NCBI RefSeq assembly: GCF_004010195.1
Contig: NC_057726.1
Location: 61,607,835-61,671,834, forward strand
Source: Chiloscyllium plagiosum
Lineage: Eukaryota
Length of the DNA: 64,000 nt
Direction of reading: 5' to 3'
Part shown: in pieces, positions 3,787-49,265 of the stretch
Layout of the letters: the number at the start of each line of letters is the position of its first letter
How positions within the stretch are numbered: position 1 is the stretch's first letter
Program-made: the position numbers and the translations under genes
The notes under the pieces: generated by a model
Told to the model about the DNA's origin: nothing
The model's database searches: none
What the model saw: the letters and a program-made list of their open reading frames with translations, nothing else

Positions 3787-3834
3787 TTACAGATTGGCGT
3801 ACGTCAGATTGTTACCTTCGCTTCCTTTCTTGGT
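3787..3834 (-). CDS. Gene A exon 7, terminal cytoplasmic exon with ITIM LTYANL
   Basis: Acceptor ttactttcacag, TKKGSEGNNLTYANL*. The frame continues past the stop to a relic ITSM TLYAGI and a second stop at 3694. Paralog at 29475. Confidence 0.8.
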   Translation of the reverse strand, partial: TKKGSEGNNLTYANL

Positions 3835-6800
3835 CTGTGAAAGTAAAATTTAATATCACGCATTATCCCATCATTGACTCTTTGCTAAACGCAGTCAATT
3901 TTTTAAATAAAAAGACTTCAGGGGAATTTCCTTTCATCATTTGCCAACTTCAGATTGTAACAGAGTTTATAATTATTTTTAACTGATTTCTCTCCACTCT
4001 GTAGATCTGCAGTAAAAGTTCCTGTTATTCTGATTTAAACTTCTCATAAAATAAGCTAGAATATCAACATTGCCCATTAAAGAAGCACGTTTTTGCTTCA
4101 ATTAAAATAGCAAATGAATGAAATGCCGGTGTATTAAATGTGTTTGGAATGCTGATATTGCAAAACATCACTTTCAACACCCAATTTCTGAGCCGTGACA
4201 GCCATTGTGATGTGCTTACCGATTGGGGAGACCTCAAGTTGCAATTTACTACCACCTTTACCCCATTGTTGCTGATTTACCGAACTCTGGGACCCCGGCG
4301 AATATGGTGAGCCTTGGCCGAGATGGTCGGGCCCAGTACAGTATGGGTTAAACATCGGACCTTTCGATTCCTACAGTTTAGATTAGGACCAAACGTCATT
4401 GAACGTCTTTAAAAAATGGTAAAGCTTCACTTGATCATAGACGGTAATCTTCTTTGTTTGTCTGGGATTCTTATTTGTCTTGGTGCTGGATTCGACAGGG
4501 TAGGCATAAAGAGGTTTGTTCTGAGTTCAGTACTTTGTATGTAAAATCGGTATTTGCCACTCTTATCAGTTCAGTTGCTATCATTATTACTGCTAGTTCA
4601 TAAAAGGAAACAAGGATAATTTTCATTGCATTCTCACGCAAAACTCACAGTAAGATCTAGCTGTCCGTTTGATATCTCCCCTGATTTCTATTTCCGACAA
4701 AATCGGCAAAAGAAACATCGACATCGGTTTAATTTTGTCTTTTTTGTCATAGCATAACATGCAAACAAGGAATAAGAGCAAGGCACTAGGCCCTTAAATC
4801 CTGCTCCATCATTCAACAATGTCATGGCCGACTCTGTCAACGCTACATTCAGATTCCCCTCGATAATCTTTCATCCGCTCTATCATCGACAATTTATGTA
4901 CCCCGCCCTAACATGTTTAATGTTTCCGCATTTAGTGCCATTTGGGCTGGACGCTGCCGCAGGACATAGCAGGCAGAGCAGCGGTAGACGACCAGTACGT
5001 GGCCACCGCCATCCGACGCCTTAAAACGGCGGTGCTCGGACCGGACGTAGTGCACCAGTTGGAGGACGCTCAGGTGTGCGGTGGGATCCCGTCCGCGCTC
5101 ACCCCAGCCCGGCCGGAATTTCACATTGGCCCCAACGTCCCGTACTTCCCGCGGGAGCCTGTGCCCCACAACCTAAGCCGCCTCCGAAATTTTAACTTTG
5201 TTTCGTTTAGGGAAATAAAAAGAAGAGCCCTGTACAGACTGCTGCTGCACACCTTACTTGAAAGCTGCTAGCATGCAAATGAGGCAGGAGCAAAACATAC
5301 CTAGCACCTCAGAATAGCCAAGAAATCCTCAGAGTCTGAGAAAGACGCAGCCTTGATGCTGTTACCATCAAAAGGAGAGGAGGAAACTCTTGAGATACTC
5401 CATGCAGAAGAGATGGATGATGCTGCCCATGTTCAAGTCTGAGTCAGAGGAATTGGACCTGGGCAAAAACGTCCAAAAGAAGCCATAAGAAAAAGAACAG
5501 GCCTACATTCCCAGACTTGGTGGGGGAGGGATGTAGAGATTAGAACTAGAGCCAGGTGAATCTCATTGACAATGAGATCCTTAAATGGCCCAGGTTAAAA
5601 ACTCCAATGAGTGTGCCCTGGCTGACAGTTATGAACAAGAGCATTCCCCATCCACTTCTGTTTTGATTTAGTCCCTACCCTCCCCTTCACTGTTTTGATC
5701 ACACAGCACTGTCCCTTGATGTGAAGGGCAGTGCTTGTCACTGGTCACCCGGGTGTTTTCCTATCTTCCTGGTGGTGGAAATTGAATAAAGATTGGTGCA
5801 CTTTGTGTCTTCCACTGTGTCTCAAGAAAAAAAAAATAGTGCCATTTGAAGAAGGGATTTTCAAAGACTTACAACTCTACAACAGAAACGAAAAATCCTC
5901 ACCTCTGTCTTAAATAGACAATCATTTACTTTGAAACTTAGACTTCTACTTTTAGATTCTCCCACAAAAGCAAAGATCCTTTCAGCAACCAAATTTGTCA
6001 GGATTTTATATATTTCAATTAAGTCACCCCTAACTCTTCTAAACTCCAGAGGTATAGGCCTACCCAATGGTTTATAGCTTTTGAAAAGGAAGCGAGAAAT
6101 CAAAATTAACATAGGTCCCAAAGAGAAGGAGGTGGGGAACAAAATCATGGGGAACCAGGAAATGGTAGAATACACTAGCAGCATTCTAAATTATTAAGTA
6201 TCCAAGGGCAAAACGAGGAGTGGAATTAAAGAAAATAACTGTCACTGGAGAGGATGCGTCAGGGAAACTAATGGGGCAAAAGACTAATATGTCCTTTGGA
6301 CCTGATGCAGTACATTACACAATATCAAGGGAAGAAGATACAGTAGTGGATGCACCAATAGTAATCTCCCAGAAATCCTTAGATTCTGAAAGAAAAACTC
6401 CCAGAGGAGTAAAACTTTTCCAAACCAACATCTTTATATAGACAAGAAATAGTTATAAATAAGCTAGTTAGCGAACGCTTGAGTCAATTATAAAGGATGC
6501 AGAGTATTTCAAAATACATAATATCATCAGAGTCAGCTTGCCTTCATGAAGGGGTAAACATGCCTGACAAATTGACTGTATTTTTATTGAGGTAAAAGGA
6601 GGGCAGATGAAGCTGAAGCAGTAGATGCAATATTTTTGGATTTTCAGGAAACATTCACGAAAGTAGCACAAACTAGGTTACTTTATCAGATTAAAAACTC
6701 ATGGTGTTGCGGGCAGTACATTAACATAGATAGAGGATTGACGAAGTAACAGAAGACTGAGATTTGGGATAGGGTGGTAGGGCATTTTCAGAATGGAAAC

Positions 6801-9800
6801 CTGGAACTTCTGGTGTGACACAGGAATTAATACTGGGGTCACAAAGTTTCCAGTTATATATATTTATATATATTACATTTGGATGTAGCAAGTGCATGTA
6901 CAATGGCCGAGTTTATGGTTAACATTAAAGTAGGCTGGAGGCAGGATGATGAGAATTACACAAAAATCTTTAGAGGGATTTAGCCTGATTACGTGAATGG
7001 GCAAAGATTTGGCAGATGGGATATAATGTGGGAAAATGTGAGATTTATACACTTTGGCAGAATGAATGGAGGGGCCAAATATTCGTTAAATGCAGAAAGC
7101 CTGCAGAATGCAACGGAGCAGAGGAATTTTGGAGTCCCAATTCGCGAATCACAAAAAGCTAGCACGCATTTACAACAGGCAATAGAGAAGGCAAATGGAA
7201 TGCTGGCCTTTATTTCAGTGAGAATGGAATATAAAAAGCAGGGATATTTGCCAAAACTATACGAGGCACAAGCTAGGCCAATGTCCTTCCATCAAAAGGT
7301 TGACCAGTATTGTACGCAGTGATGTAGAATTGCTCTTATCAATCCCTTGCATTAATGAAATAGGGAGCTGTTCTTCTGATAACAATTCATGACAGTTTGT
7401 ATGATCAACATTTACTGAAATTAGCTTTGCATTCCAGATTTTTCGATTGAATTAATTCCCATTAGCTGCCCTAGTGAGATTTAAACCGATGTCCCCATGC
7501 TACTAACCTTGGCAACTGGATATCTGCCACTCGTTCTGTTTTATCAAGTCAAAAGTAGAGCATCCCCTTCCCTTACTCTACAGTGTCTTTTTTTAAACGA
7601 CTCCATTATCGCAATGACTAAGAGAAAGTGAGGACTGTAGATGCTGGAGGTCAGAGTCGAGAAGTGTGGCGGTGAAAAAGTACAGCAGGTCAACCAGCAT
7701 TGGAGGCTTAGGAGTGAAGATGTTTGCCGAAACGAACACTCTCCTGCTTCTGGGATGCTGCGTGACTTGCTGTGCTTTTCCAGCACTAAACTTTTCGACT
7801 CCATTATCATAATATTGATGTTGTATGAGAGTGACGTGGATATTTTATTCTTGACAATTCTGGCAGCATACCTGGGAATTGACAGTACTTTCTTCCGCGG
7901 GTCTGTGTTTGGAGAATCCTTTGTTGGTTTTCAATTTTACTGCAGCAGAGGCGGCATTTTCTTCAGCTGGTGCTTTTCTAAGCTAGAAAATAAGATATGA
8001 AATATCGAGAGAAGCGCATTTGATTTTACAGCCAGCCATTGGAACTGAACAATAGAATATTAACGTGCACACAGTAGTTAATCAAACAAGCTAGAAATTG
8101 CATTCTGTCAACTCTCAATGATTTGCATCTAATATCTCACCAATGTGTTGGGGAGTAATGTTCTAAATATGAAACCCAGAGCATTTAACGCATTTACCTA
8201 CAATTTAACATACAGCTGACGAAAAATAGACATTAATTAATTCCTCGTTTATCTCTAGCTCTCTTCAATCTTGTTGTAGCCTCGGCAGTTTCCTTATTCC
8301 ATAATTAACCCAGTCTATTAGAAGATCAGGCAGCGAAGCCTTTGGCTGTTCTCCTAATACTTTTGGAATCTTGTATTCTCTGACTGGCAACCAACAATTA
8401 GATTTCTGGCAAAAATTCTCCCCAAGCGCGTCTACAGTCATTATTTCCTCTCCCTCAGAAACTACGAAACAGCCTGCCCCCAGCACTGCTAACAGAGGAA
8501 TATAATGCAGAAAGGCCTGAGATTTTATGTCGCACACTACTTTAGGAAGATGTCGTGGTTTCGAGAGGATATAACAGAGATTTACGAGAAGGGTCCTAGC
8601 GTTCAGGGATTTCAATGATGTTTAGAAGCCTGGACATGATGCTTTACTTAGATCAGTTACGTTTAAGGGGAGATTTAACTTAAATGTCTAACATCTTGAT
8701 AAATTGTGATGGAATAAATTAGGATAAACAATTTTCATTGGCAGGATGTTTGAGATTTAGGCGACAAGATTCGTTTTCATTGGTAAATAATCTGGGGAGT
8801 ATGTTTGTTCTGCAGCCCAGTGAGCTGCCCGCAAACTGACAGAGTGACAGGAAGAATTCGATAGGAAGTTTCAAAAAGGGAACTGGATTGACCTGAAAAA
8901 TGTAATAAACAGGAGAATAGCACGAGACCGGAACAAATGACTTACTGCCTCATAGAGGCAGTAGAGGTGCTCGCTCTTCATCCCGGGCAATGTAATTCTC
9001 TGTTCTGTGAAATCAAAGTAATTTTGACTGAATGCAAAACTCATTGCTATCCTTTCCATGCACCCACCTCCCATTTGTTTGGAATATAATGAATATTGTC
9101 TCCTTACCGGTTGGACATTTTGATTTGCTTCCACCGAATTTCTTCCTCTGCCTAAGAGAAAGCAAAGTAATATAACGTGAGTGACAGAATCACTCATTCA
9201 ATGTCATGTCTTCGCTGCTAGAAACGTTTAATTTTTATATAAAGTTCAGAAATCTAGTTTGACAATGTTCAGCAGCACCAAGCTCGTTATGCTGTGTTTT
9301 ACCTGCTCACTGCTGTCATCGCGCTTTACCCAATGATGCAGAGTCAGTGACAGTGCAAGTGCAAGTCGGCGTCTTATTTAATCTACAAAATTAGAATGGA
9401 AATAAAATCTGCGGATGTGCATATCTGGTTGTGAGTTCGAAAATGCCCACTTAACCTTAATGCCAAATGCCAAAATCCATTCGAAACATTCGAAAAATGT
9501 TTCCTTCTCAGGAACTGGACCTCCACTGAACTATAATAGAGAACACTCAAAGTTTCGATTTCAGCACCATGGAGGTGAATAAACCGAGTGTATAGTTCGA
9601 ATAAGAAGGTGAAATATTTGCTTTTCAAATCCGGTTAGATCCTCATATCCTAAATTTAATGCCAGGCCTTTGATTTCTCACCTGCTCTCTATGCTTTTTA
9701 CACTGGGTCTGAGGAAATAAAAAGTATACAGTGAAATAAGAAAGATTCTTACCAGCTGATGCTTTCAATTTGAGTATCAAGAAAATGCTTATGATTAGTA

Positions 9801-12800
9801 CCATCGCCAATGCCCCTCCTGCACCTCCAATAATCATCGGACGATTAAAATCTTCACCTACAGAATCAACACGTGATGGAAGTGAACATGTGTGGAACAC
9901 AGGAGTGACATACACAGAGCAAAATGCACAGGATGATAAATTGCAAAGGTGTTTCTCAGGATAACCCAACTGTTAACCAAATTGGACAGTTTTAATTTTG
10001 TTGGGAAAACCTGTACAAGGTCCTTAATTCGCATCAGACCCAATGAATTGCAGCTCAGCTATGTATTTTATGGAGAAAACACATATAATGACTTAATGGT
10101 GTGAGAAACTTTATCTGCATAGGAACACTGTTTGCTATGAGTAAAGAAAGTTGTACTTGCTCATTCATAGAATCCGAGAAGAATCATAGAATCCCTATAG
10201 TGTGTAAACAGGTCATTTGGCCCAACAAGCCCACACCGATCCTCCGAAAAGTATTGCAGCCAGACCCTATTGCTCTCCATTTCCCCTGAATGATGCACGA
10301 AACCTACACATCCCTTAACGCTATGGGCAATTTAGTTTGGCCAATTCACCCAACTTGCACATCTTTGGACTGGGGGAAGAAACTGAAGCACCCGGAGGAA
10401 ACCTGCACAGACTCGGGGAGAATGTGCAAACTCCACAGTCGCCGGAGGCTGGAAGTGAAGCCAGTTTTTTGGTGAATCAACAGTGCGAACCACTGAGCCA
10501 CCATGCTGCCATTTAGGATCTTCCCCACACCACACACCCCAATCCCTATTAGATATATTTTCAATCTTACCTCGATTAAAGGTGTAGCTGACGCTGGTGG
10601 GCACCTTAAGACAAGCATGAGATACCAGACAGGTATAAACTGCACCACTCTGCACAGGCTGTGCATCTTCCAATGAACTAGTAACCTCATAAAGCCCATC
10701 CACGGTCTTGTTTTTCACAGTCTCCATTCCGGTATGAATTTTGAAACCATCTTTTAACCAAGAGATTCCTAAATCCTCTGGGTAAAATGCAGTCGTTTTG
10801 CATTCGAATTTCAAATAGTTCTCTGAAATCTCTTCTACGGGAACGATTTTCTGGAGTTTCGGAGGAACTATAACAGAAAATCAAACCTTTTAAAACATTA
10901 ATTTTCATTCTCTTTTTTTCACCCTTCACACTCGACCCGGTTCGGCACCCCATGTAATACTGTTCCATTACTAATGTGACAACAGTTTTCCTTGTTATTC
11001 TGTTTGAAACTTGGTATTTGCACTTATTTTTAAAAATGCTCAGCAAAATGTTTGGATCATTTGCAAACGATGCACAACGATCATAAACATGGGTAGAAAA
11101 ACTTTAATGAAATGCAGCTATCAGAATCGTCGGGGTTTAGCTTTATGTCAGTGAATTCGGTTTGATGAACTTTTTTTGGAAGACATTCTACCTGGAGGTA
11201 ACACACGAATTAGGAGCTGAAGTAGGACAGTCAATGGGTATCTCTCCATCCTGGAGGCTCCCTGCCTCCATTCCTGATGAAGGGCTTTGCCCTTTCCAAT
11301 CTAAACTTTGGTTTCCAGCATCTGCAGTCCTCACTTTTGCCCAGCCAATGGGCAGTCAATTCAGCTATTTGAGCCTGATCCAACAGTTAATATGATCTTG
11401 TCTGAGTTCTTTCTGTTCCTGATTGGCATTCCCGGTTTAGTATGAAACCTTTTTTTGAAGTATCAATTCTACATTACTCAAGTGAACTTGTGCCCTCTCC
11501 ATCTACAAGCGGTGTTTAGCTGCGAGCTGATCTCCTGTCATAACTCCCATTGCATAGAAAGAATAAGTTACAAACACGAGCGCAAACGTTTTTCGGCATG
11601 TTTGCTGCTGCCCTTCCTTCATTTTGCCTGCTATGCCTACATCAGAGAGTATCCATTTGGCGAACCGCAGAGGGCCAACCAGAGGCAATGGGCAACTTCA
11701 CTGCCTTACACGCTTTAGGATTGTGGATAGAATCCAGTATTGAGGGCAACGTCAACACTTGCTGTCTCACTGAATCATGTGATTCATTTGTTAAAATAAG
11801 CATTGGCATTTCAAACATGTTAGTATTGGGAAAATGCGCTCCCGAAACACTAATCAATTCCACTCTTGAACTTACTCTGCCATTCACTTAGGTTATGGTT
11901 GAACTGTACCTCAACTCCATTTGTCCGGTTTTATTCTATTTCCTTTATCCCCAGGATTAAATTTACTTGATGTCGATCTCCAAGTTTGAAGGATTTGCGA
12001 CAGAATAGTTTGATCGGCAATTTGGGGTCAAAACATTGTCTTGTGTCTGTTGAATATTAATGGCTGTGGGTATGTTTTCATTCACCTTAATTTGACGTGA
12101 ATGCATATTGTCGATGCTGATAAGATGGTCTTTATTATCTTGTATCAAAGCAAGAGCTGTTGGAGCTGTTAAAATTATTCTTATGAAAGATTATGACCTG
12201 AAATGTTAATTGTGTTTTTGATCAACAAGGAAGTTCAAAGGTATCAGAGCGGACAGAAAAATGCAGTTGAGACCATAATCAGATCAGCCATAATGTTGAT
12301 GAGTGGCTGAGTACACTCAAGGGATGAATGGTCTACTCTTGCTTCTAATTCTTATGATCGTATTACCTATGTAGATGTTCAGACATGTTTCAAATAATTT
12401 CTGTTCATATTCCAACTTTTCAAAATCCGTAGCACATTGTTTTGTTTTCTTTTTGATTCTATTGTCACAGTTTAGTACCGTTATTTTGGTTTGAAGTAAA
12501 CTGTGCATTTTGCCTCATGATACAAAAGACAGAAAATGCTAGAGAAACTGAGTAGGTCTGGCAGCATAAAAACATAATAAATAGTTGCAGGGGTAGGCCA
12601 TCTGACTCGCTAAGCCTGCTCTGCCATTCAATAAGCTTATCGCTTTCTTGGACTCAGCTCCACTTACCCGCCCTCTCACCTTTATTTTCTTTAATGTTCA
12701 AAAATCTAAGTATTTTTGCCTTAAAAACATTCATCGATATAGGTAGCTCCAGTGCTTCACTGGAAAGGGAATTCCTCAGATTCACAATCCTTTGAGTGAA

Positions 12801-13931
12801 GAAGTTGGACCTCAACTTAGTCCTAAATCTGCTTCCCCTAATTTTGAGGCTGTGCGTGAAGTGAAAGGAGAGTTAACGTTTCCAGGTCCAGTGACCTTTC
12901 TACAGAAACGTTCTGAAGAAGGATCGTTGAATGCTAAACGGTAGCGCACACAGATGCTGCCAGACCTGCTGAGTTTTTCCAGCAATTTCTAGTTTTGTTT
13001 CAGATTTCCAGAATGCATTTTTTTTTATTTTATCTTACTGCATGAATTAATGTCATCCTAAAATTTGAACAGTTATCCCATTTCACTATCTTGACGCAAA
13101 ATCAACTGCTTCTGCACCAAAAAGGCACTCATTGAATTAATAACACTGCGCAATGTCATGATCACAATGAGCAATGGAATTGATCTTGAGAAATGGTGTA
13201 AGACGTACGAAAGCTAATCAACAGCCGTTGTACAGCGAGGTCGTTGCTACAATGTGAAGCAAATACGCTGTAACCGAGTTTTCTCTAATTATTAAAGCTC
13301 AGATCACATGAATTGCATAAAACAGCTGAAGAGTTGTTTGTCCTGGGTGCAGTGCCACTTACCGCACACTGTCAGCAATGAGCCGCTTTCTGCTCCATGA
13401 GTGGCTTGCTGATGCTTTATTTTACAATGATACATTCCAGAGTCTGCAAAAGTGACGTTGAGAATATGAAGCGAGCCTCTTCCTTTCTGGACATGAAAAC
13501 GCTTTCTGTTGTCTGGTTCCAGAAACGATTCCTCGTTGTGTCTCCACCAAAATATTTCAGGAACATGTTCAAATATTGGAAATGTGCAGAACATGGAAAC
13601 ATTGTCACCTCTGGCCGCCTCTAAGAGTTTGGGAAACTGATGTACTTTGCTCGAAGTTACTTTAGTGACGACTGAAAAAAAAGTAAAACCATGATATAGC
13701 TGTAGACAGCTGACATGAAATAACATCGGGAGGAGTAAAATCTGCAAACAATTGAGAACAACCGCACGCATTAAATTGGAGAAGCAAGACATCAAACTTT
13801 GCAATTTATGGAAGCTGTAAATATGAAATAAAATCTAGGTTACTCTCAAAGGACAATTCGTAACATATAGGAGTACCTGGCCAAGCCATACGCAGAAGAG
13901 CCATGAACAGAACCGCTGCTCTGACCAACAT
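3787..13931 (-). CDS. Gene A: IgSF type I membrane receptor (leader-V(J)-C1-TM-cytoplasmic ITIM), SIRP-like / VJ-C1 family, 322 aa; join(13877..13931,13363..13671,10571..10867,9753..9857,9108..9151,7872..7982,3787..3834)
   Basis: Seven exons with GT-AG boundaries and compatible phases (1,1,1,1,0,0) total 969 nt and are open to TAA. They encode a signal peptide, V-set and C1-set Cys/Trp motifs, a hydrophobic TM and a terminal LTYANL. Six of the seven exons have a same-phase paralog of similar length in gene B. Confidence 0.85.
4925..5265 (+). mobile_element. Tx1/L1-clade non-LTR retrotransposon ORF2 fragment
   Basis: GC-rich island encoding LTPARPEFHIGP..REPVPHNLSRL..LYRLLLHTL, recalled as typical of the Tx1 ORF2 C-terminal region. 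Confidence 0.6.
5645..5836 (+). mobile_element. Tx1-like 3' UTR with poly(A) tail
   Basis: Similar to 39060..39220. AATAAA is followed by an A-run. Confidence 0.55.
6180..7280 (+). mobile_element. Degenerate CR1-type LINE RT fragment
   Basis: Remnants of the LDFQKAF, GVPQGSVLG and KANGMLAFI motifs with many stops. Confidence 0.75.
7620..7800. mobile_element. Short hairpin element derived from a Penelope terminal repeat
   Basis: Starts gagaaagtgaggactg, has internal inverted repeats, and is flanked by direct repeat cgactccattatc. Confidence 0.65.
7872..7982 (-). CDS. Gene A exon 6, cytoplasmic with degenerate ITIM/ITSM
   Basis: Acceptor ttattttctag, donor CAG|gtatgc, 111 nt, phase 0/0. LRKAPAEENAASAAVKLKTNKGFSKHRPAEESTVNSQ aligns without gaps to exon 7. 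Confidence 0.7.
9108..9151 (-). CDS. Gene A exon 5, membrane-proximal cytoplasmic
   Basis: Acceptor ttctcttag, donor CCG|gtaagg, 44 nt, RGRNSVEANQNVQP. A 44-nt paralog lies at 38038..38081. Confidence 0.85.
9753..9857 (-). CDS. Gene A exon 4, transmembrane (uncharged, GxxxG-rich)
   Basis: Acceptor ttctgtag, donor G|gtaaga, 105 nt. EDFNRPMIIGGAGGALAMVLIISIFLILKLKASA. Confidence 0.9.
10185..10512 (-). mobile_element. HE1-like tRNA-derived SINE in the gene A C1-TM intron
   Basis: Minus strand begins ggcagcatggtggctcagtggtt (A box); body homologous to 42585..42899. Confidence 0.85.
10571..10867 (-). CDS. Gene A exon 3, Ig C1-set domain
   Basis: Acceptor ttctgttatag, donor G|gtaaga, 297 nt. Motifs FECKTTAFYPEDLGISWLKDG..DGLYEVTSSL..YTCLVSH. 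Confidence 0.95.
13363..13671 (-). CDS. Gene A exon 2, Ig V-type domain with J-like G strand
   Basis: Acceptor ttttttcag, donor G|gtaagt, 309 nt. Motifs VHQFP..VSMFC..IFWWR..SLHILNVTFADSGMYHC..SGSLLTV. Confidence 0.95.
13877..13931 (-). CDS. Gene A exon 1, signal peptide MLVRAAVLFMALLRMAWP
   Basis: ATG at 13931, 55 nt, phase-1 donor CAG|gtactc. Same length as the gene B leader and similar in sequence. Confidence 0.85.
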
Positions 13932-38400: not shown

Positions 38401-41400
38401 AGAAATGTGGAAGGTTTCTTTTATCACAGAAAATTGTGCCAGTTTGGAACTCCCTGCTCCAGAAGGTGATCGTTGAATATTTTAAAGGCAGTAGTGCTTG
38501 GATTCCTGTTAGACAAGGGAAATGAATGGTTACTGGGGGATAGTTGGGAATGTGGAATACCAAACACGAACTGATCAGTGATAACCTTATTGAGTGATGG
38601 TAGGTCTGGAGCAGCTGATTGGTCTACTTGTGCTTTTAACTCATATATACTGTATGCTTGTGGGAATAATGTATTGAGTGCACAAGCATCAATAGGGATC
38701 TGCCTTCCAAAGATCTAGAGCTCCGTGTTGAGTACATTGTCTTCCCAAATCCTCCCTTGGTACTAATCACAACAGAGTAGACTCTTCCTCTTGTGGGAGA
38801 GTGAATTGACAGTTTAGTTTGCATTGCAAAGTTACTTTGGACATAACAATTGGGAGTAAAGTGAACCAGATTGGCATAGTGATTGCAACCAGGTTGATAT
38901 TATTGACTGTGTGATCCTCGATTGGGGTTGTAACCCTGGCTGACCAATATAAACAGGAGATTCTGGATGCCCCTGGAGAAGGAAAACTTGGTGTCTACCA
39001 GTAACCTCGAGGTTTTTATGACGAGGTTGGCACCATAGTGTGTAGAGTGTTTTATTCCCCCCTCTGATTCTATTTTGATTTAATCTCTACCCTTCCTTTC
39101 AATTTTTCAATCATGTAGGAGCATGTCCCTAAGGAGCATTGGCGACTTGGGTGCTTTTTCTTCCTGGTGGTGGAATATGAATAATGTTTTATTCACTCGT
39201 TGTTTCTTCACTGTGTCCTGCACATATATGCACACAACATGGGTGCTGGGGAGAAATAAGCACGACTGCTGTTTGGTGGTAGCATGGAGGATTGAGGAAA
39301 AATATATAAACAGGGGACTCAGGATCTCCTCACTTCATGGACTGACTCTGGGCTGGATGGCAACAGCCAGTTTACCGTACACTTGTAAATAAAGGGCGAT
39401 TTGGTGACAGTATACCAGCGTCAGTGTCGTTATTTCAGTTAACTATTCTGATATCACTTTAAAATGAGTACACTGGCACTGCTACTTTTAGAACTGGATT
39501 GGGGTGGGAGTAATTTGTTTACAAAATTGAGGAAATAGTTTGAATGAGGTTTATGTTGTCATGTTGAATTGTCAAACTGCTTCTAACATCAACTTCATTC
39601 TTTAAAGATGTAGAAAGGTGTTCACTATTCCTGCATAGTTATTCACTATTCATCTGCTCTTTATGTCTTCTAACAAGTAAAATTGCCTCTTGGAAGATGA
39701 AACATATTCAGCAGAATAACAAAGTAGAAGTTCATAGAAGTTCATAGAATATGCACATCTGGTATATGAATGCTGGTATACTGTCACCAAATATCATTGG
39801 GACTTGGAAACTAAAAATATTCAGCAAAATAACAAACATTCTTACCAGCTGATGCCTTTAACTCAAGTCTTGTTAAAATGATTATCAATAGTAAAATTGC
39901 CAGAATGCCACCAGCCCATCTAGAGATCAGCAGATAATTGAGATCTTTACCTATAGGATTAATAACACTTGAATGAGAAACTGCAGAGTACAGCGTGATT
40001 TCGACACAGAGAATCATGATTCAGACACAGGAAGGCGATCTGCAAAATAGTATCCCAGGACGATCACATCCAATAAACATCAATAGAGACTGATCCTTTT
40101 TATTTCAATGGGTAGTATGTGTAAAACGATTATAAGGTGTATCACATGACATATCAGTCACAATCCCACAATACAACTTATGGAGGGAACAATTCCATAG
40201 AGATTGAGGAATCTTCACTCCTGGTCATTTCTTAAGAGGAAAAACAGTTACATATTATTGATATCATCGTGTTAGCATTACACATGATTGATATCATCGT
40301 GTTAGCCCTTTATTTACATTGAAAGCACCAGCTGGAAAAAATCATCAGATTTAACACTTCCTGTAACTTTTGTCAATTAATATATGCATCTTGCTTTCAT
40401 TTAACTCGTTTAACATGACAAAGCATCCAATGCTCTCCAGAGGACTGTTATCAAGCAGTCCAGCCACATAAGGCACATTAGAACAAATGGATCAGAAACA
40501 GAAACTCCTGGAGCAAATCAGCTGGTCCAGCAGCATCTGTGGAGAGAGAAACTGATTAAATAATTTGAGTCGAGTGGCCCTTCTTTAGAACTGATAGCAG
40601 CTAGGAAAAAGTGGTATGTATGTTGAAGACAAATATTGGGGAATGGAGAGTGGAGGTGGAGAAAGGGGTGAGCAGAAAGGCAGAGATGGAGCCAAAAGAG
40701 AGAGAACAATAAAAAAGGATGGATGACAACATGCCAGGAAAATAAAAAGCTGACATTGGTGATCATAACTAGATGAAAATTGGTTGACTGTGCTGAAAGC
40801 AGCTCATGTCATTGCCAGGATCTGCAGTGTGAGTGTCGGTAAAGGATATGAAAGTAGTATTCAGGCACTAAAATTATTGAGCTCGTCATTGAGTTCTGAA
40901 GGCTGCAATATCCCCAAGTGGAAAATGAAATGCTGCTCTTCCAGGTTGCACTGAGGCTTGATGCATCACTGCAGCAGGTCTGAGACAGGAATGATAGCCA
41001 GAGAACATGATGGTATGCTGAAGTGGCAGCAACTGGAAACTAATTTTTAAGGACAGAATGAAAGTTTGTTTACAAAGCTGTTGCCTGGTCTGCATTCTGT
41101 CTCAGCAGTGTATAGGAGACAACATTGTGAGCTGTGAATATAATATATAGGTAATCACTGCTTCACTTGGAAGCTGTGTCTGGATTCGAGTGTGAGGAGG
41201 AAGGAAGTAAATGGGCTACCACAATATTGAACCTACTTCTACTTTCTTCCCAAAATCTAGCAACAGGAATGACAGGGCAGAGCTGCTGTTCCTGCCACAC
41301 AGACTTAATCTCTTAATACCTTGATTCAACATTTTATCCCATTCTCAGCTCAGTTCCCATTAATATCCATGATTTATGTGAAACGTTGCATCTGTTTAGA

Positions 41401-44400: not shown

Positions 44401-47400
44401 TTCATTTTACTTGGTAAGAATTTGAGGAATATTTTGATTCTTTTCCCATTTATTACACTTTGGGAGTTAATACAGACTGCATCCACACCTTTCCCCGTGT
44501 TTGGACAGCTGTTCAACTGCCTGTCTACTCTCTAAACCCAGATTGGAGCACTTGGTCCATTTCACTGTTGCCAATGTTTCCAGTCTTACCTGGATTGACG
44601 GTGTAGTTGACACTGGCGGGTACAGGAAGGGAAACATGTGACACCAGACAGGCATAAACCACTCCGCTCCTGACGGGATGCGCTTCTTCCAAAGAGCTGG
44701 AAACCTCATAAAGCCCATCTGCTGTCTTCTTCACGGCTTGTATACTCGGCAGATTTTCGACACCATCTCTTCGCCAGGTGATACTGACAGGCCCCGGGTA
44801 ACAGGCAGCGGTTTTACACACGAGTTTCAGGGAATCGGCGGAAATCCCTTCAACTTGAATGACCTTCAGTGGCAATGGCGACACTTAAAGGAGAAGATAA
44901 AAAAGAAATGGAACATCTCCTCATTTGACCACATCCGTGATACTGTTACATTCATAGCGTGACAATACTTATGCTCTTTATCGTTTAATTTTAAACATTG
45001 AAGTGTTCTATCCCCACAACAAAATAGCAGGAATATGTGAAACGATAAGCAGAGTTTGAATCTCCCAGGACTGGTAACACGTAGGAAGACAGTCAGAATG
45101 TTCGGAAGGAGATCCTGGAACGGGATTGGAGTTAGCAGCAGTCGGATCTCTGAGCAAATCTTTCGAAGGCAGTACACCTCATTGTGCTGCTGAATCATTT
45201 CTCCCCTTAGTGCAGTAGGGAAGGTTTGTGGTATTAAACATTTTGTCTCGTACATTCCTTAAAACATTTCCTAAAGAAGAGTCAAACCAAACTAGAAACG
45301 CTAACTCCATCTCTCTCCACAAATGCTGCCAGATCCACAGCAATTCTCTTCGATTGTTTCCTCTTTTTCAGCACATCCCTGCAGCTTTTAATGTTTCTTT
45401 CCGGATAGGTATAAAGTTCCCCTTTGTCTGCTAAGATTGCACCAAGGTGTCCGGTAGTGCCCTCCAGATCCTTACAAAACTGCTGTTAATGATTTTCTGA
45501 CTATTGTACGTGACTGTTTTGCAAATTATCTTAAATCTACGTCCTCTGTTTGTTCCTCACCAATGGGATCAGCTTATCTGGTGTATACTGTCCTTAGCCT
45601 TGTTAATTACTGATCAGTGTGTAGTTCATAACATCCGCACAGATGCAGAATCCAGGATGGAAAATTCCAATTCTGAGTGCATGTCTTATATAATTCCAGC
45701 GTTTTTGTACTCCCTCAGATCATTATGTCTGCTGGACTCTGTATTTGCCTGCTTTTATCAGCTTTATTTTTGACCTTTAACAGACGTGAATCAGTGTCCG
45801 TACAACCTGGAGGTATCATAAACCTGAGATATGGGGCGTTGTTAAGTTTGCATTATTTGTGAGATTATTGAGGAGCAATTTGATGTTTTCCTTAGGTGCA
45901 TACTTTTCTGAAAATTGCAAAACATAAAATACCATAAAATATGGTCATTATCAATTTGCAAGTTTCGTTACAATTTATGGTCAACAGAACTGCATTAAGT
46001 GCATAGCCCAGACTCAGGATTGCGTCATTCTTTAACCCTGGATCTGCGTTAGTTAAGGGTGGCAAATATGTGATCCAGGAGATGTTAGAATTGTTCCCAC
46101 TGTCACATGTCAGCATGGTCACTTTGGAGAGAAGGTGTCTTGTCTTCGAGTCATAGAGACGGACAGCATGGAAACAGGCTTTTCGGTCCAACTCATCCCT
46201 GAAGAGCAGATATCCCAATCCGTCCCACCTGCCAGCTTTCAGCCCATATCCCTTGAAACCCTTCCTATTCATATATCCATCCAGATGCTTTTAAATGTTA
46301 TAATAGTGCTAGTCTTCACCACTTCCTCTGGCATCTCATTCCATATACATACCACCCTTTGCGTGAAAACGTTACCCCGTAAGCCTCTTTTATAACTTTC
46401 CTCTCTCACCCTAAACCTATGCTCTCCAGTTCTGTACTCCCCCACCCCAAGGAAAAGACTTTGTCTATTTATCTGATTCATGCCCCTCATGATTTTTATA
46501 GACCTCTATAAGGTCACCTCCCAGCCTCCAACGCTCCAGCCTATTCAACCTTTCCCCATAGCTCAAATACTCCAACCCTCGGAACATCCTTGTAAATATC
46601 TTCTGAATCATTTCAAATTTCACAACATCCTTCTGATAGGAAGCAGAACAGAATTGCACGAATATTCCAAAAGTGGCCTAACCAATCTCCTCGACAGCGG
46701 CAACATGACCTCCCAACTCCTGCACTCAATACTCTGAGTGATAAAGGAAAGCATACCAAACGCCTTCTTCACTATCTTATCTACCTCGACTCCACTTTTA
46801 AGGTGCTATGAACCTGCACTCCAAGGTCTCTTTGTTCAGCAACACTCCCTAGGACCTTACCATTAAGTGTATAAGGCCTGCTAAGATTTGTTTTTCCAGA
46901 ATTCAGCACCTACATTTATCTAAATTAAACTCTATTTGCCATTTATCAGTCCATTGCACCATCTGATCAAGATCCTGTTGTAATCTGAGGTAACCTTCTT
47001 TGTTGTCCACTACACCTCCAATTTTGGTGTTATCTGCAAACTTACTAACTATACCTCTTATGCTCACATCCAAATCATTTATCTAAATGACAAAACGTAG
47101 TGGACCAAGCACCGTTCCTTGTGGCACTCCACAGGTCACAGGCCTCCAGCGAGAAAAATGACCCTCCACCACCACCCTCTGGCTTCTATCTTTGAGCCAG
47201 TTCTGTATCTAAATGGCTAATTCTCCCTGTATTCCATGAGATCTAACCTTGCTTTCTGGTCTCCCATGGGGAACCTTGTTGAACGCCTTACTGAAGTCCA
47301 TATAGATCATGTCTACTGCTCTGCCCTCATCAATCCTCTTTGTTACTTCTTCAAAAAACTCAATCAGGTTTGTTAGACATGATTTCCCACGCACAAAGTC

Positions 47401-49265
47401 ATGTTGACTCTCCCTAATCAGTCCTTGCTTTTCCAAATGTATGTGCATCCTGTCCCTCAGGATTCCCTCCAACAATTTGTCCACCACCAACGTGAGGCTC
47501 ACTGGTCTATAGCTCCCTGGTTTGTCCTGACCACCGTTTTTAAACAGTGACACCACGTTAGCCAACCTCCAGTCTTCTGGCACTTCACCTGTGACTATCG
47601 ATGATCCAGATATCTCAGCAAGGGGCTCAACAATCCCTTCCCTAGCTTCCCACAGAGTTCGAGGGAAGGTCCCGATTAGGTCCTGGGCATTTATCCACTT
47701 TTATGCGTTTCAAAACATCCAGCTCTTCCTCCCCTGTAAAATGGACATTTTTCAAGATGTCACCATCTATTTACCTACATTCTATACCTTCCATGTCCTT
47801 TTCCACAGTAAATACTGATGCAAAATACTCGTATAGTATCTCCCCCACTTCCTGTGGTTCCACACAAAGATCACCTTGTTAGTCGTTGAGGGGCCCTGTT
47901 CTCTCCCTAGTTACACTTTTCTCCTTAATTTATTTGTAAGAACCTTTTGAATTCTCCTTAATTCAACTTGCCAAAGCTATCTCATGTCCCCTTTTTGCCT
48001 TCCTGATTTTCCTCTTAAGTATACACCTACTGTCTTTCTAAACCTCATTGATTCATTCCAAACCAAAATGTAAACTTGTATTTCAGTATCATGTTTTGAT
48101 AAGAATTGCAACTGGACAAACATAAAGCTAGATACAACCGTTTCTAGTATCAGGAGAGCAAGCGAGTGAAATTGATCTTTAACTAAAGTACTCAAATAGC
48201 GAGAATGAATCGGTTATTTAACACGAACTCAATGACAAAGAAACTACGAGCCAATGTAAAAGCAATTTGAAGAACCTTCATCTAACGATAAAAAGAATTG
48301 CACGTATCTAATAAAACTGAAAATCAGCCTATCCCGATACAAGGATCCTTACCGGAAACAGTCAGCTGTGTGCCACCTCCATCTTCAATCGACCTTCGCC
48401 GGTGCTTTACCTCACAGAAATACACTCCGGCGTCAGCTAAACTGGCGTTTAGGATATAAAAAGAACTTGTTCCCCTGTTTGTATTGATTCGCTTTCTGCT
48501 GTCTGGCTTCAGAAACGATTCCTCACCCCGTCTCCGCCAATAAACATCAGGAGTTTCTTCAAAGATAGGTAACATGCAGAAAATGGAAACATTCCCACCT
48601 CTGGTAATGCTCAACAACTTAGGGAACTGTTTCACTTTTCTCAAAGTTACTTCAGCCGCTATCAGAAAAGAAAGAAAAGCCACGATAATACACTGTATTT
48701 GATCAGAACAGAAACCGCACGGAGCAAGATTAGGCCGTTCAGCCTCATAAGCCTGTACGGCTATTCAATAATTCTGTTCTGATTGTAGTTCAAATCCGCT
48801 TTCCCACGTATCCCTGACAACCTTTCAACCCGTGGAGAAAGTGAGGACTGCAGATACTGGAGATCGGAGCTGAAAATATGTTGCTGGAAAAGCGCAGTAG
48901 GTCAGGCAGCATCCAAGGAGCAGGAGAATCGACGTTTCGGGCATAAGTCCTTCTTCAGGAATGAACCTGCCTAACCCACTGCGCTTTTCCAGCAACACAT
49001 TTTCAACCTTTCAACCCGTTGCTTGGTAAGAATAGGATAGACACAGGGCAAAGAAAAACCTTAGCGAAGTAAAATGTAAGAACTATTGAAAATGATAGCG
49101 ATCGAAGTGAAGCAGCACAGTGTTTGATTGTACAATGTAGAGCCATTGCAGCATATAGCAAAATAGGGCATAACGGATTTGGTGTAGCACCATTTAACAA
49201 CTGAACATACCTGACCAAATGATGCCAAGTAGAGTTATGTACTGTACTGTAACCCTCAGCAACAT
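29431..49265 (-). CDS. Gene B: IgSF type I membrane receptor (leader-V(J)-C1-TM with Arg-short tail), putative activating paralog of gene A, 282 aa; join(49211..49265,48353..48658,44590..44883,39846..39950,38038..38081,29431..29475)
   Basis: Six GT-AG exons with phases 1,1,1,1,0 total 849 nt and are open. The V domain is about 50% identical to gene A by manual alignment (50/99). Confidence 0.82.
30860..34740 (+). mobile_element. Near full-length degenerate CR1/HER1-like LINE (ORF1 esterase-like; ORF2 APE + RT) in the last intron of gene B
   Basis: ORF1 motifs IVLGDSLVR and HIGNNDIG. APE motifs AITETWL and VGDFNFPNIDW. RT motifs NYRPVSL, QHGF, MDLSKAFDK, QGSVLGP and KFAD. Tail ctctatgactcta. 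Multiple stops and frameshifts. Inserted into a short hairpin element. Confidence 0.92.
36250..36490 (+). mobile_element. 5'-truncated HE1-like SINE
   Basis: tgtgtggagtttgcaca..cacagtccaaagatgtg core and (aatct)n tail. Confidence 0.8.
38038..38081 (-). CDS. Gene B exon 5, membrane-proximal cytoplasmic
   Basis: Acceptor ttcctttag, donor CTG|gtaagg, 44 nt, VRKHSVEVDETQQL. Confidence 0.85.
38890..39437 (+). mobile_element. Solo-LTR-like element with a nested Tx1 3' end (about 38975..39303)
   Basis: TG..CA ends, TATA-like motif and AATAAA. The insert encodes a decayed EKE..VST..LE.F..R.AP..VECFI C-terminus. atataaacagg is repeated on both sides. Confidence 0.5.
39846..39950 (-). CDS. Gene B exon 4, transmembrane with N-terminal arginine
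   Basis: Acceptor cctatag, donor G|gtaaga, 105 nt. KDLNYLLISRWAGGILAILLLIIILTRLELKASA. Confidence 0.9.
40490..43410. mobile_element. Penelope-like element with inverted terminal arms and an RT remnant
   Basis: The left arm (40490..41215) is the reverse complement of the right end (about 42330..43410). A decayed RT lies between them. Confidence 0.7.
42585..42899 (+). mobile_element. Young full-length HE1-like tRNA-derived SINE nested in the PLE
   Basis: Intact A box (tggcacagtgg), B box (ggttcaattcc), retained CpGs and (aatct)n tail. Confidence 0.9.
43413..44397. mobile_element. Two abutting CR1 fragments (plus 43413..44122, minus 44123..44397)
   Basis: GVP..LGP, KFAEDTK and RPRLE motifs, then an inverted CR1 3' tail. 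Confidence 0.75.
44590..44883 (-). CDS. Gene B exon 3, Ig C1-set domain
   Basis: Acceptor ttctcctttaag, donor G|gtaaga, 294 nt. Motifs LVCKTAACYPGPVSITWRRDG..DGLYEVSSSL..YACLVSH. Confidence 0.95.
46148..48045 (-). mobile_element. CR1/HER1-like LINE, 5'-truncated, in the gene B V-C1 intron
   Basis: ORF 47209..47583 PEDWRLANV..YRPVSLT..MDFSKAFNKVPH. Same family as 30860..34740. Confidence 0.9.
48353..48658 (-). CDS. Gene B exon 2, Ig V-type domain with J-like motif GGGTQLTV
   Basis: Acceptor ttttctgatag, donor G|gtaagg, 306 nt. Motifs VSIFC..VYWRR..ADAGVYFCEV..GGGTQLTVS. Confidence 0.95.
48835..49003. mobile_element. Short Penelope-derived hairpin element with 16-bp target-site duplication
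   Basis: caacctttcaacccgt flanks both sides; internal inverted repeat. Confidence 0.8.
49211..49265 (-). CDS. Gene B exon 1, signal peptide MLLRVTVQYITLLGIIWS
   Basis: ATG at 49265, 55 nt, donor CAG|gtatgt. Homologous to the gene A leader. Confidence 0.85.

What the first reader, a model, noticed from the sequence alone, without database searches (positions are those of the whole stretch)
3787..49265. Putative shark paired inhibitory/activating receptor family with V(J)-C1 ectodomains
Seen: two tandem paralogs with the same exon plan and about 50% V-domain identity. A has a neutral TM and an ITIM; B has a TM arginine and a wrecked ITIM/ITSM exon. Established: the same split defines paired immune receptors (SIRP alpha/beta, LILRB/LILRA, PIR-B/A, teleost NITRs). 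A's tail resembles the four motifs of SIRP-alpha (ITYADL, TEYASI, LTYADL, SEYASV), but the ectodomain has one C1 domain rather than two. Inference: a lineage-specific paired-receptor cluster in a cartilaginous fish that still shows the mutational steps from inhibitory to activating. I cannot confirm that it is undescribed.
Basis: partly seen in the sequence, partly recalled or inferred. Interest (0 to 1): 0.9.

Follow-up and report, generated by a model that had tools for sequence, protein, structure and literature searches.

The report
Shark SIRP-like receptor genes losing ITIMs
Two neighbouring shark genes belong to a large, apparently undescribed cartilaginous-fish family of immune-type receptors, and both are losing their inhibitory signalling tail, one of them while gaining a charged membrane residue typical of activating receptors.

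Summary
Two minus-strand genes share one exon plan: split leader, germline-joined V(J), one C1-set domain, TM, and small tail exons. A runs 13931 to 3787 and B from 49265 to about 29431. All splice sites are AG/GT and the phases fit. The V domains are 50% identical.

A has an uncharged TM and ends LTYANL-stop. B has a TM Arg (GGA to AGA) and three frameshifts in its last exon.

- The family is not lineage-specific. All 42 database relatives are chondrichthyan, including chimaera. NCBI auto-names them SIRP-alpha-like, NCR3LG1-like or tapasin-related-like.
- A and B are old paralogs (dS 0.8-1.6), each closer to other species' genes than to each other. They are not a strict pair.
- A is eroded too. 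It keeps one canonical ITIM where the horn-shark relative has four Tyr motifs at aligned positions plus a further ITSM-like one.
- A catshark member has an Arg one TM position away and a short tail, so ITIM-less charged-TM forms recur.

No RNA evidence could be obtained, so B as an activating receptor is inferred. Nine literature searches found no description. The scan has noted the same family elsewhere in this genome.

The parts
13877..13931 (-). Gene A leader exon (55 nt, ATG at 13931, ends in phase 1). An identical second copy lies at 14397-14451.
   Evidence: tBLASTN with horn-shark P0155 residues 1-22 hits both copies.
13363..13671 (-). Gene A V(J) exon (309 nt, phase 1/1), a compact V domain with a J-like end (SGSLLTV).
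   Evidence: Pfam V-set E 2.6e-11. 59.6% identity to P0155 with E 1.4e-36. Splice sites.
10571..10867 (-). Gene A C1-set exon (297 nt, phase 1/1), with the YTCLVSH motif.
   Evidence: Pfam C1-set E 5.9e-10. PDB hits to Ig constant domains and to UrIg2 9dmx at 1.2e-14. Splice sites.
9753..9857 (-). Gene A stalk/TM exon (105 nt) with an uncharged hydrophobic core.
   Evidence: 52.8% identity to the P0155 TM.
9108..9151 (-). Gene A cyt1 exon (44 nt, phase 1 to 0).
   Evidence: It is the candidate with the best splice signals among the open small exons of the right phase listed (pyrimidine tract 0.8, the highest value listed, and GTAAGG donor). Its peptide matches catshark P0163 at 69% over 13 aa..
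7872..7982 (-). Gene A cyt2 exon (111 nt, phase 0/0). It is the homolog of the ITIM...TVY exon, with both Tyr replaced by Ser and Asn.
   Evidence: tBLASTN with P0155 residues 268-304, 40.5% identity, E 0.024, collinear. Splice sites.
4431..4520 (-). Gene A cyt3 exon, probable (90 nt, phase 0/0). It keeps a TVYDQ motif. The polypyrimidine tract is weak.
   Evidence: tBLASTN with P0155 residues 297-337, E 0.09, collinear. AG/GT borders. This is the least certain exon.
3787..3834 (-). Gene A last coding exon. It ends LTYANL followed by TAA (3787-3789).
3694..3786 (-). Cut-off ITSM end of gene A. After the stop, 30 codons stay open, including TLYAGI, up to the ancestral stop.
   Evidence: tBLASTN through the stop: 57% identity over 47 aa to the P0155 C-terminus, E 1.9e-8..
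49211..49265 (-). Gene B leader exon (55 nt, ATG at 49265).
   Evidence: tBLASTN with P0155 residues 1-17, 53% identity. Sequence and donor.
48353..48658 (-). Gene B V(J) exon (306 nt), with the J-like end GGGTQLTV.
   Evidence: Pfam V-set E 2.1e-8. 63.4% identity to P0155 with E 2.7e-38..
44590..44883 (-). Gene B C1-set exon (294 nt).
   Evidence: Pfam C1-set E 6.1e-8. 61% identity to P0155..
39846..39950 (-). Gene B stalk/TM exon (105 nt), with Arg (AGA) about five residues into the hydrophobic stretch.
   Evidence: Apart from three residues at its outer end (SRW for FGC), the hydrophobic stretch and the residues up to the Lys-to-Glu change are identical to horn-shark P0155. DNA-run contigs X3 and X4 cover the exon, and no different letter inside it appears among the rows shown; 43 rows were not shown.
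38038..38081 (-). Gene B cyt1 exon (44 nt, phase 1 to 0), intact.
   Evidence: Found by local alignment. Aligns to A's cyt1 without gaps, with conserved AG and GTAAGG.
29334..29475 (-). Gene B last exon. The acceptor is conserved, a 1-nt deletion inside the ITIM gives LAYAT-stop (stop at 29431-29433), and two more 1-nt indels follow. The ITSM peptide TVYAGI survives out of frame.
   Evidence: 72.7% identity to A's last exon. Frames. tBLASTN with P0155 residues 330-361.
1..1747 (-). Copy of the region upstream of gene A (95.5% identical to 14524-16280). It is the 5' flank of a third family member that lies left of the window.
   Evidence: Earlier scan notes s1-886266 and s1-883904 were not tested beyond the duplication.

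Best explanation
A and B are two members of a multigene family found across cartilaginous fish. Each encodes a type-I membrane receptor with a split leader, one germline-joined V(J) domain, one C1-set domain, a TM exon, and a tail made of small exons. The ancestral tail carried repeated units of ITIM followed by TVYAQ, and ended in an ITIM plus an ITSM.

Shown: the ancestral state of both genes was inhibitory.

Gene A keeps an uncharged TM and one canonical ITIM at its very C-terminus. Two tyrosines in cyt2 and the terminal ITSM are gone. I infer that A still recruits SH2 phosphatases of the SHP-1/2 type, but weakly.

Gene B keeps intact leader, V, C1, TM and cyt1 exons. It has lost the ITIM and ITSM to frameshifts, lacks recognisable cyt2 and cyt3 exons, and has gained an Arg in the outer third of the TM by one base change.

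I infer that B is a maintained, non-inhibitory derivative. It would signal through an ITAM adaptor with an acidic TM residue (the FcR-gamma, CD3-zeta or DAP12 class). Activating KIR, LILRA, PIR-A and SIRP-beta are thought to have arisen from inhibitory ancestors in the same way.

The receptors' ligands are unknown. With 50% V identity, A and B probably do not share one.
For: Gene structure and family:
- All 15 proposed exons have AG/GT borders and matching phases.
- Horn-shark P0155 maps collinearly on both genes.
- All 31 hits and all 42 hits are chondrichthyan.
- Long tails with ITIM and ITSM-like motifs occur in most members with a neutral TM.

B is kept by selection:
- A-B dN/dS is 0.45 (V), 0.23 (C1), 0.41 (TM) and 0.35 (cyt1).
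- B's terminal branches are no longer than A's: 0.39 vs 0.36 in V and 0.33 vs 0.31 in C1.
- Three frameshifting indels lie in the last ~103 nt of B's last exon, and none in the 804 nt of its five upstream exons. By my arithmetic, the chance that the two later indels both fall there is about (103/907)^2 = 0.013.

The tail loss is young:
- The last exons are 72.7% identical, like the coding exons, while introns no longer align and dS is about 1.

The Arg is derived:
- A, horn shark and most relatives have Gly at that position.

Precedents in the family:
- Catshark P0163 has Arg at the adjacent TM position, and its model ends just after cyt1 with no ITIM.
- Horn-shark P0160 joins cyt1 directly to the last exon, the splice B would need.
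- In a crude census of the 43 relatives (of 47 scanned) in which a TM was detected, 11 of 13 with a charged TM lack an ITIM-type motif, against 9 of 30 with a neutral TM (Fisher p 0.002). The rows are related, so this is not a clean test.

Established background: SIRP-beta uses a positively charged TM residue to bind DAP12, and SIRP-alpha ITIMs recruit SHP1/2 (PMC12975943, passages).
Against: - There is no RNA evidence. No RNA run holds B's V exon. The three holders laid are genomic-DNA-like. The one single-cell RNA run gave 0 reads, which is no test.
- The Arg sits only about five residues into the TM and could snorkel to the surface.
- S. torazame P0192 combines an outer-TM Arg with an ITIM/ITSM tail, so a charge alone does not make a receptor activating.
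- dN/dS is averaged over the whole A-B history, so it cannot exclude a recent death of B.
- A is eroding as well, which fits general decay of this part of the cluster.
- A single ITIM ending at the C-terminal residue may bind phosphatases poorly.
- No adaptor gene was examined.
- A's stop and B's indels rest on one assembly. I could not lay reads on them.
Confidence: 0.4

Rival explanations
1. B is a signal-less receptor, either a decoy or an adhesion type like SIRP-gamma. It is kept by selection for its ectodomain, has lost inhibitory signalling, and binds no adaptor. The Arg is a tolerated change at the edge of the membrane.
For: - The same evidence of maintenance applies: dN/dS below 1 and no frameshift in 804 nt of upstream exons.
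- The Arg lies near the outer end of the TM.
- P0192 shows an outer-TM Arg beside an ITIM tail.
- SIRP-gamma is a known short-tailed member that does not bind DAP12 (PMC12975943, passages).
Against: - Charged TM residues go with ITIM-less tails in the family census.
- A second species has an Arg at the neighbouring position together with a short tail. That argues the charge is used.
Confidence: 0.25
2. B, and perhaps A, are dying copies in a birth-and-death family. The tail lesions are the first hits of pseudogenisation, the Arg is one more neutral change, and neither gene has a present function.
For: - Both genes carry disabling changes in the signalling tail.
- B lacks recognisable cyt2 and cyt3 exons, and a LINE sits in its last intron.
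- No transcript evidence was obtained.
- The genome holds many other family members that could carry the function (unchecked notes).
Against: - Five B exons (804 nt) and all their splice sites are intact, while the last exon collected three frameshifts.
- B's protein branches are not longer than A's.
- The conserved Cys, Trp and YxCxVxH residues are all present in both genes.
Confidence: 0.25
3. The stop in A and the indels in B are assembly errors or rare alleles. Both genes would then be ordinary inhibitory family members.
For: A's lesion is a single base (TAA where B has AAA and horn shark has Gln). The downstream frame is perfectly open.
Against: - B would need three separate 1-nt errors in about 100 nt, plus the Arg codon.
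- B's TM exon shows no different letter in contigs of the two DNA runs that span it, among the rows shown.
- A's two Tyr losses in cyt2 are independent of the stop.
Confidence: 0.05

Closest known systems
SIRP family (SIRP-alpha, -beta, -gamma) of mammals
   Same: - Type-I receptor with a membrane-distal V domain that has a J-like strand, followed by a C1-set domain.
- Family tails hold repeated ITIM-type tyrosines about 20-25 residues apart.
- Members with a charged TM and short tail exist beside inhibitory ones.
- NCBI auto-names many relatives 'tyrosine-protein phosphatase non-receptor type substrate 1-like'.
- The nearest named clusters by language-model features are SIRP-alpha clusters (0.96, 205 of 256 features; a lead only).
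- The family profile aligns collinearly to SIRP-alpha d1-d2 (49.6 bits) and to d3 (44.4 bits).
   Different: - One C1 domain, not two. The SIRP definition is taken from PMC12975943 passages.
- The V-C1 stretch scores higher on Ig light chains (64-66 bits) than on SIRP-alpha.
- No bony-vertebrate protein was recovered. Those searches are limited by word sharing, so the blank proves little.
- Ligand and synteny are unknown.
UrIg and UrIg2 (elasmobranch non-rearranging VJ-C1 genes)
   Same: - Germline-joined VJ exon, split leader and C1-set domains, in cartilaginous fish.
- UrIg2 (PDB 9dmx) is among the best PDB matches of A's C1 (E 1.2e-14) and of the family profile (E 2.6e-32).
   Different: - Nurse-shark UrIg2 has one VJ plus nine C1-type domains. 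No ITIM is mentioned anywhere in that paper's main text (PMC12227049: section 7 read, term search).
- Here there is one C1, an ITIM tail, and a large multigene family.
Paired activating/inhibitory Ig-like receptors (KIR, LILR, PIR; teleost NITR; skate MDIR). Recalled, not checked in a call.
   Same: - Clustered genes that evolve by birth and death.
- Inhibitory forms have a neutral TM and ITIMs.
- Activating forms have a basic TM residue and a truncated tail, derived from inhibitory ancestors by a point change and tail disruption.
   Different: - Those ectodomains are C2/I-type or V-only, with no C1-set domain.
- True pairs have near-identical ectodomains, whereas A and B share 50-55%.
Ig light chains and TCR chains (V-C1 antigen receptors)
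   Same: - They give the best-scoring collinear V-C1 matches in PDB (64-66 bits).
- G-x-G J motif, split leader, phase-1 exons.
- NCBI auto-names some relatives 'Ig lambda-like' or 'TCR beta-like'.
   Different: - V and J are joined in the germline, with no separate J or recombination signal to rearrange.
- The V domain is compact, and its best single-domain PDB hits are I-set domains.
- The genes carry their own TM and ITIM tail.
NKp30/NCR3, B7-H6 (NCR3LG1), tapasin-related protein, PRARP
   Same: Other non-rearranging V(J) or V-C1 genes. These are the automatic names given to several relatives.
   Different: - NKp30 and PRARP have a V domain only (recalled; PRARP seen only as a reference entry).
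- None of these appeared among the best PDB matches.
- The names come from automatic best-hit labelling, not from tests.

Membership tests
SIRP family | Ectodomain of one V-set plus two C1-set domains (PMC12975943, passages) | tested here: not met
   There is one C1 exon between V and TM in A and in B. Of the four relatives scanned, the three single-gene models (P0155, P0163, P0164) each give one V and one C1 match; the fourth, P0175 (489 aa), reads as two fused gene models and also gave one C1 match.
SIRP family | V domain with a J-like G strand | tested here: met
   B ends GGGTQLTV. The family consensus is GNGxGSxLxV. A's motif is degraded (AESGSLLTV).
SIRP family | SIRP is the closest relative by sequence | tested here: inconclusive
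   With the family profile against PDB, SIRP-alpha d1-d2 scores 49.6 bits and Ig light chains 64-66 bits. The ESM Atlas puts SIRP-alpha clusters first (0.96). No SIRP of bony vertebrates was recovered.
SIRP family | Cytoplasmic ITIMs that recruit SHP-1/2 (alpha), or a basic TM residue that binds DAP12 (beta) | not testable with these tools
   The motifs are present: LTYANL in A and Arg in B's TM. Binding was not tested.
SIRP family | CD47 binding and conserved synteny with the SIRP cluster | not testable with these tools
Chondrichthyan V(J)-C1-TM-ITIM family (NCBI models such as XP_067906043 and XP_038662025; unnamed in print as far as I found) | Collinear leader, V, C1, TM, cyt exons and tail with significant similarity in each domain | tested here: met
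   tBLASTN with P0155: V E 1e-36 (A) and 3e-38 (B); C1 E 1e-32 and 1e-28; TM, cyt2 and last exon in order. In both trees A and B sit inside the shark clade.
UrIg/UrIg2 | One VJ followed by several C1-type domains (PMC12227049, section 7) | tested here: not met
   A single C1 exon, then the TM exon.
Paired receptor (strict sense) | Activating and inhibitory partners with near-identical ectodomains | tested here: not met
   A vs B: V 50.5% and C1 55.4% identity. A groups with catshark genes and not with B (SH-aLRT 97).
Paired receptor (strict sense) | Basic TM residue plus loss of ITIM in one member, and neutral TM plus ITIM in the other | tested here: met
CEACAM family (considered because of its ITIM/ITSM tail and PDB hits to CEA) | N-terminal V-like domain without the disulfide, followed by C2-type domains | tested here: not met
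   Both V exons have the Cys...Cys pair, and the second domain is C1-set with YxCxVxH.

The most novel reading that the evidence does not exclude
The window samples a large non-rearranging VJ-C1 receptor family that spans the chondrichthyans and is unpublished. Its ectodomain resembles an antigen receptor (closest to Ig light chains) and its tail resembles SIRP-alpha. The family would then be either the cartilaginous-fish counterpart of SIRPs or a separate relic of the pre-RAG antigen-receptor stock. Within it, ITIM-less forms with a charged TM arise repeatedly from inhibitory genes. Gene B would be such a conversion caught midway: a one-base Gly-to-Arg change plus a still-legible frameshifted ITIM/ITSM exon.
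Probability: 0.3. Interest if true: 0.75.

Novelty: new variant of a known kind. Interest (0 to 1): 0.5.

Why it matters
Non-rearranging VJ-C1 genes are the candidates for what the RAG transposon invaded when antigen receptors arose. So far the shark examples discussed in print are UrIg and UrIg2 (PMC12227049, PMC10751288). This is a second, much larger VJ-C1 family, with its own TM and ITIM tail, present from chimaera to sharks and rays. It bears on that question and on the origin of SIRPs.

The window also gives a clean natural example of how an inhibitory receptor becomes a non-inhibitory, possibly activating one. The charge-creating base change and the decayed ITIM/ITSM exon are both still readable. 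That makes the step testable with adaptor and phosphatase binding assays in a basal jawed vertebrate.

Tried and rejected
RNA support. The look-up of sequencing runs with B's V exon listed no RNA holder. In read laying on 34800-40100, runs X3-X5 had contigs running straight through exon/intron borders (37887-38163 and 39822-40100), so they are genomic DNA. The single-cell RNA run X8 laid 0 reads. No conclusion on expression is possible.

B's missing exons. BLASTN at word size 7 and sliding local protein alignment over 29000-39845 found cyt1 but no cyt2 or cyt3 homolog.

Second TM type. I searched the window with the C-terminal ends of nine relatives. There is no exon of the Arg...Asp/Glu-His TM type.

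Bony-vertebrate relatives.
- all 31 hits chondrichthyan.
- all 42 hits chondrichthyan.
- (tail only): 10 hits from 21 candidates, all chondrichthyan.
- These searches need shared 5-residue words, so a blank says little.

Representative search. Most of the 150 rows are giant multi-Ig proteins. I kept 17 rows for reading: 16 matched in one or two stretches over most of the query, and P0113, a three-V protein that I did not use further. The other 133 rows were set aside unread.

Families considered and rejected: UrIg/UrIg2 membership (many C domains), CEACAM (C2 domains), and a strict paired-receptor reading for A and B (50% V identity).

The census is crude. It misses the Arg in P0018 and P0128 and counts stop-transfer Arg in P0167 and P0030. 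Four of the 47 proteins had no TM by the rule.

Literature. Searches found no paper on a shark V-C1-ITIM or SIRP-like family. The library holds open-access papers only. Ohta 2019 (PMC6761025) and Flajnik 2023 (PMC10530332) are not held.

What I saw of each paper:
- PMC12227049: outline, all of section 7, and term passages.
- PMC10751288: passages only.
- PMC12975943: passages only.
- Fu 2019 (PRARP): a reference entry only. Its content is recalled.
- All others: search listings only.

Full report
WHAT IS THERE

The window (64 kb, 35-46% G+C, two 500-N gaps outside the genes) carries two genes on the minus strand. Self-BLASTN shows that, apart from transposon copies, A and B resemble each other in only four short collinear places:
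- V exons, 70.6% of 286 nt
- C1 exons, 70.3% of 293 nt
- TM exons, 71.1% of 159 nt
- last exons, 72.7% of 161 nt

A fifth pair, the 44-nt cyt1 exons, was found by an exon scan and local alignment. Introns do not align.

I mapped the horn-shark protein P0155 (XP_067906043, Heterodontus francisci) on the window by local tBLASTN and read the borders. This gave the following models.

Gene A exons:
- leader 13931-13877, with an identical second copy at 14451-14397
- V 13671-13363
- C1 10867-10571
- TM 9857-9753
- cyt1 9151-9108
- cyt2 7982-7872
- cyt3 4520-4431
- last 3834-3787

Gene B exons:
- leader 49265-49211
- V 48658-48353
- C1 44883-44590
- TM 39950-39846
- cyt1 38081-38038
- last 29475-29431

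All 15 exons have AG/GT borders. The phases are consistent throughout: the leader ends in phase 1, the Ig and TM exons are 1/1, cyt1 goes from 1 to 0, and the tail exons are 0/0.

- Pfam calls both first domains V-set/I-set and both second domains C1-set.
- V identity is 50 of 101 codons. C1 identity is 52 of 97.
- A's TM is uncharged.
- B has Arg at the tenth residue of the TM exon, where A has Gly (AGA vs GGA) and horn shark also has Gly.
- A ends LTYANL, then TAA.
- B's last exon keeps its acceptor but has a 1-nt deletion inside the ITIM (LAYAT-stop) and two more 1-nt indels. The ancestral peptide is therefore readable in three successive frames, and TVYAGI survives out of frame.

One correction concerns A, which is also degraded.
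- Compared with the horn shark, both tyrosines of cyt2 are replaced by Ser and Asn.
- The TAA cuts off 30 still-open codons. These are 57% identical over 47 aa to the horn-shark ITSM end (E 1.9e-8).
- Only one canonical ITIM remains.

WHAT FAMILY

An all-against-library HMMER search with A's V exon returned 150 rows. Most are giant multi-Ig proteins. I read 17 of them: 16 single- or double-stretch matches and one three-V protein, P0113, that I did not use further. The other 133 rows were set aside unread.

Their names and two further searches (with P0155: 31 hits; with alignment A3: 42 hits) show a family confined, in these searches, to cartilaginous fish. The genera are Heterodontus, Scyliorhinus, Heptranchias, Mustelus, Carcharodon, Chiloscyllium, Pristis, Mobula, Narcine, Hypanus, Hemitrygon, Leucoraja and the chimaera Callorhinchus.

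NCBI's automatic names vary: SIRP-alpha-like (PTPNS1-like), SIRP-beta-1-like, NCR3LG1-like, tapasin-related-like, Ig lambda-like and TCR beta-like. None of these is a tested assignment.

Family tails are built of repeated units, an ITIM followed about 20 residues later by TVYAQ, and end in LTYAAL...(T/S)EYAE(L/I)-type pairs.

RELATION TO KNOWN FAMILIES

- A's C1 hits Ig constant domains and UrIg2 (9dmx, E 1.2e-14).
- The V exons hit I-set domains first. This fits a compact V.
- With the family profile against PDB, the collinear V-C1 stretch scores 64-66 bits on Ig light chains, 49.6 on SIRP-alpha d1-d2 and 48.4 on UrIg2. SIRP-alpha d3 adds 44.4 bits.
- The ESM Atlas puts two SIRP-alpha clusters nearest by language-model features (0.96; a lead only).
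- SIRPs are defined by one V plus two C1 domains (PMC12975943, passages). Here there is one C1, so that membership feature is not met.
- UrIg2 has nine C1-type domains, and no ITIM is mentioned in that paper's main text (PMC12227049, section 7 and term search).

I therefore file A and B as members of a distinct chondrichthyan V(J)-C1-TM-ITIM family. It works like SIRPs and other paired receptors but is not shown to be a SIRP.

AGE AND RELATIONSHIP OF A AND B

- dS between A and B is 0.79 (V), 1.24 (C1), 0.92 (TM) and 1.6 (cyt1). dN/dS is 0.45, 0.23, 0.41 and 0.35.
- Each gene is 60-66% identical to genes of other shark orders but only 50-55% to the other.
- In the V tree A groups with two catshark genes and an unnamed ENA ORF (SH-aLRT 97). 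B sits unresolved beside the horn-shark genes.
- In the C1 tree genes cluster by species, but A and B do not cluster together.

A and B are therefore old paralogs in a birth-and-death family, not a young lineage-specific pair. Their ectodomains are too different for a strict paired-receptor reading.

By contrast, the 1.75 kb upstream of A is 95.5% identical to window 1-1747. This points to a recently duplicated third gene just left of the window, in line with unchecked scan notes.

IS B ALIVE?

Arguments for:
- Five exons (804 nt) and all their splice sites are intact. The distal ~103 nt of the last exon collected three frameshifts. If indels fell at random over the 907 nt, the two later ones would both land there with probability about 0.013 (my arithmetic).
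- B's terminal branches equal A's.
- The last exons of A and B are as similar as the coding exons, even though dS is about 1 and introns are unalignable. Both tails were therefore constrained for most of the time since the split, and the lesions are young.

Precedents:
- Catshark P0163 has Arg at the neighbouring TM position, and its model ends just after cyt1.
- Horn-shark P0160 splices cyt1 directly to the last exon.
- In a crude census of the 43 relatives (of 47 scanned) in which a TM was detected, charged TMs go with ITIM-less tails: 11 of 13, against 9 of 30 for neutral TMs. The rows are related, and the rule misclassifies a few.

Arguments against:
- There is no RNA evidence.
- The Arg is shallow in the membrane.
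- P0192 combines an outer-TM Arg with an ITIM tail.
- A is decaying too.
- The lesions rest on one assembly.

MECHANISM, WITH ODDS

| Reading | Odds |
|---|---|
| B is a maintained non-inhibitory derivative that couples through its TM Arg to an acidic-TM ITAM adaptor. A is a weakened inhibitory receptor that uses one C-terminal ITIM. | 0.40 |
| B is a signal-less decoy of the SIRP-gamma kind. | 0.25 |
| B (and perhaps A) is an early pseudogene. | 0.25 |
| Assembly or allele artefact. | 0.05 |

Shown: gene structures, family membership, the ancestral inhibitory state, the derived Arg, and the tail lesions.

Inferred: expression, adaptor coupling and phosphatase recruitment.

NOVELTY

Gene models of relatives are in NCBI under automatic names. 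Nine full-text searches found no paper describing the family.

The scan's first readers noted the same family at other places of this genome: about 2.7 kb and 95 kb left of the window, 7.4 and 7.6 Mb to the right, and on other pieces (unchecked).

I rate it a new variant of a known kind, with interest 0.5.

There is therefore no structure model and no look at synteny or at the catshark locus.

Noticed in passing
window 13798-14849: A tandem duplication (13798-14318 vs 14318-14849, 93.5% identical) gives gene A two identical 55-nt leader exons with identical upstream sequence and donors (13931-13877 and 14451-14397). Which copy is used is unknown.
   Followed up: partly
window 1-1747 vs 14524-16280: The two stretches are 95.5% identical in the same orientation (1-314 also matches 14004-14317 at 99%). 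This is the 5' flank of gene A, duplicated recently as the 5' flank of a further family member lying just left of the window. A and B, by contrast, share no alignable flanks.
   Followed up: partly
window 32069-34655 (+) and 47209-47583 (-): LINE-type ORFs. Endonuclease-reverse transcriptase (PF14529, E 6.4e-8) sits inside B's cyt1-to-last intron. A reverse-transcriptase fragment (PF00078, E 5.9e-10) sits in B's V-C1 intron. 32805-34736 and 46142-48040 are 80.6% identical inverted copies.
   Followed up: partly
window 36216-36569 and 39048-39401: Word depths of about 2e5-5e5 and 1e3-7e3 in three DNA runs, with many internal joints. These are very high-copy short repeats in B's introns.
   Followed up: no
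database proteins P0018, P0164, P0165, P0174, P0090, P0128: A second TM type in the family has Arg near the outer end and Asp/Glu-His near the inner end, with a short tail. It is conserved in Scyliorhinus, Heptranchias, Chiloscyllium and Carcharodon. In the catshark its V domain is almost identical to that of the Arg-TM gene P0163. No such exon is in this window.
   Followed up: partly
database protein P0192 (Scyliorhinus torazame): This protein has an outer-TM Arg together with a tail carrying ITIM- and ITSM-type motifs. A TM charge and an ITIM can therefore co-occur in this family.
   Followed up: no
family tails; window 4431-4445 in A: The motif TVYAQTKQ is kept from chimaera to sharks and rays at the end of each tail unit (TVYDQ in A's cyt3). 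It is not an ITIM or ITSM by the usual rule, and its role is unknown.
   Followed up: no
window 13364-13366: A has a Cys as the last residue of the V exon (LLTVC), where the nine relatives whose V-C1 junction I read have Tyr, Leu, Phe, His or Ser. Callorhinchus P0175 and the ENA ORF P0009 also have Cys. This is a possible interchain disulfide site.
   Followed up: no
window 1246-1668 and 15779-16201 (+): A 140-aa ORF lies within the duplicated upstream region and is conserved between the two copies. The copy scanned (15779-16201) has no Pfam match. It is probably non-coding or part of a repeat.
   Followed up: partly
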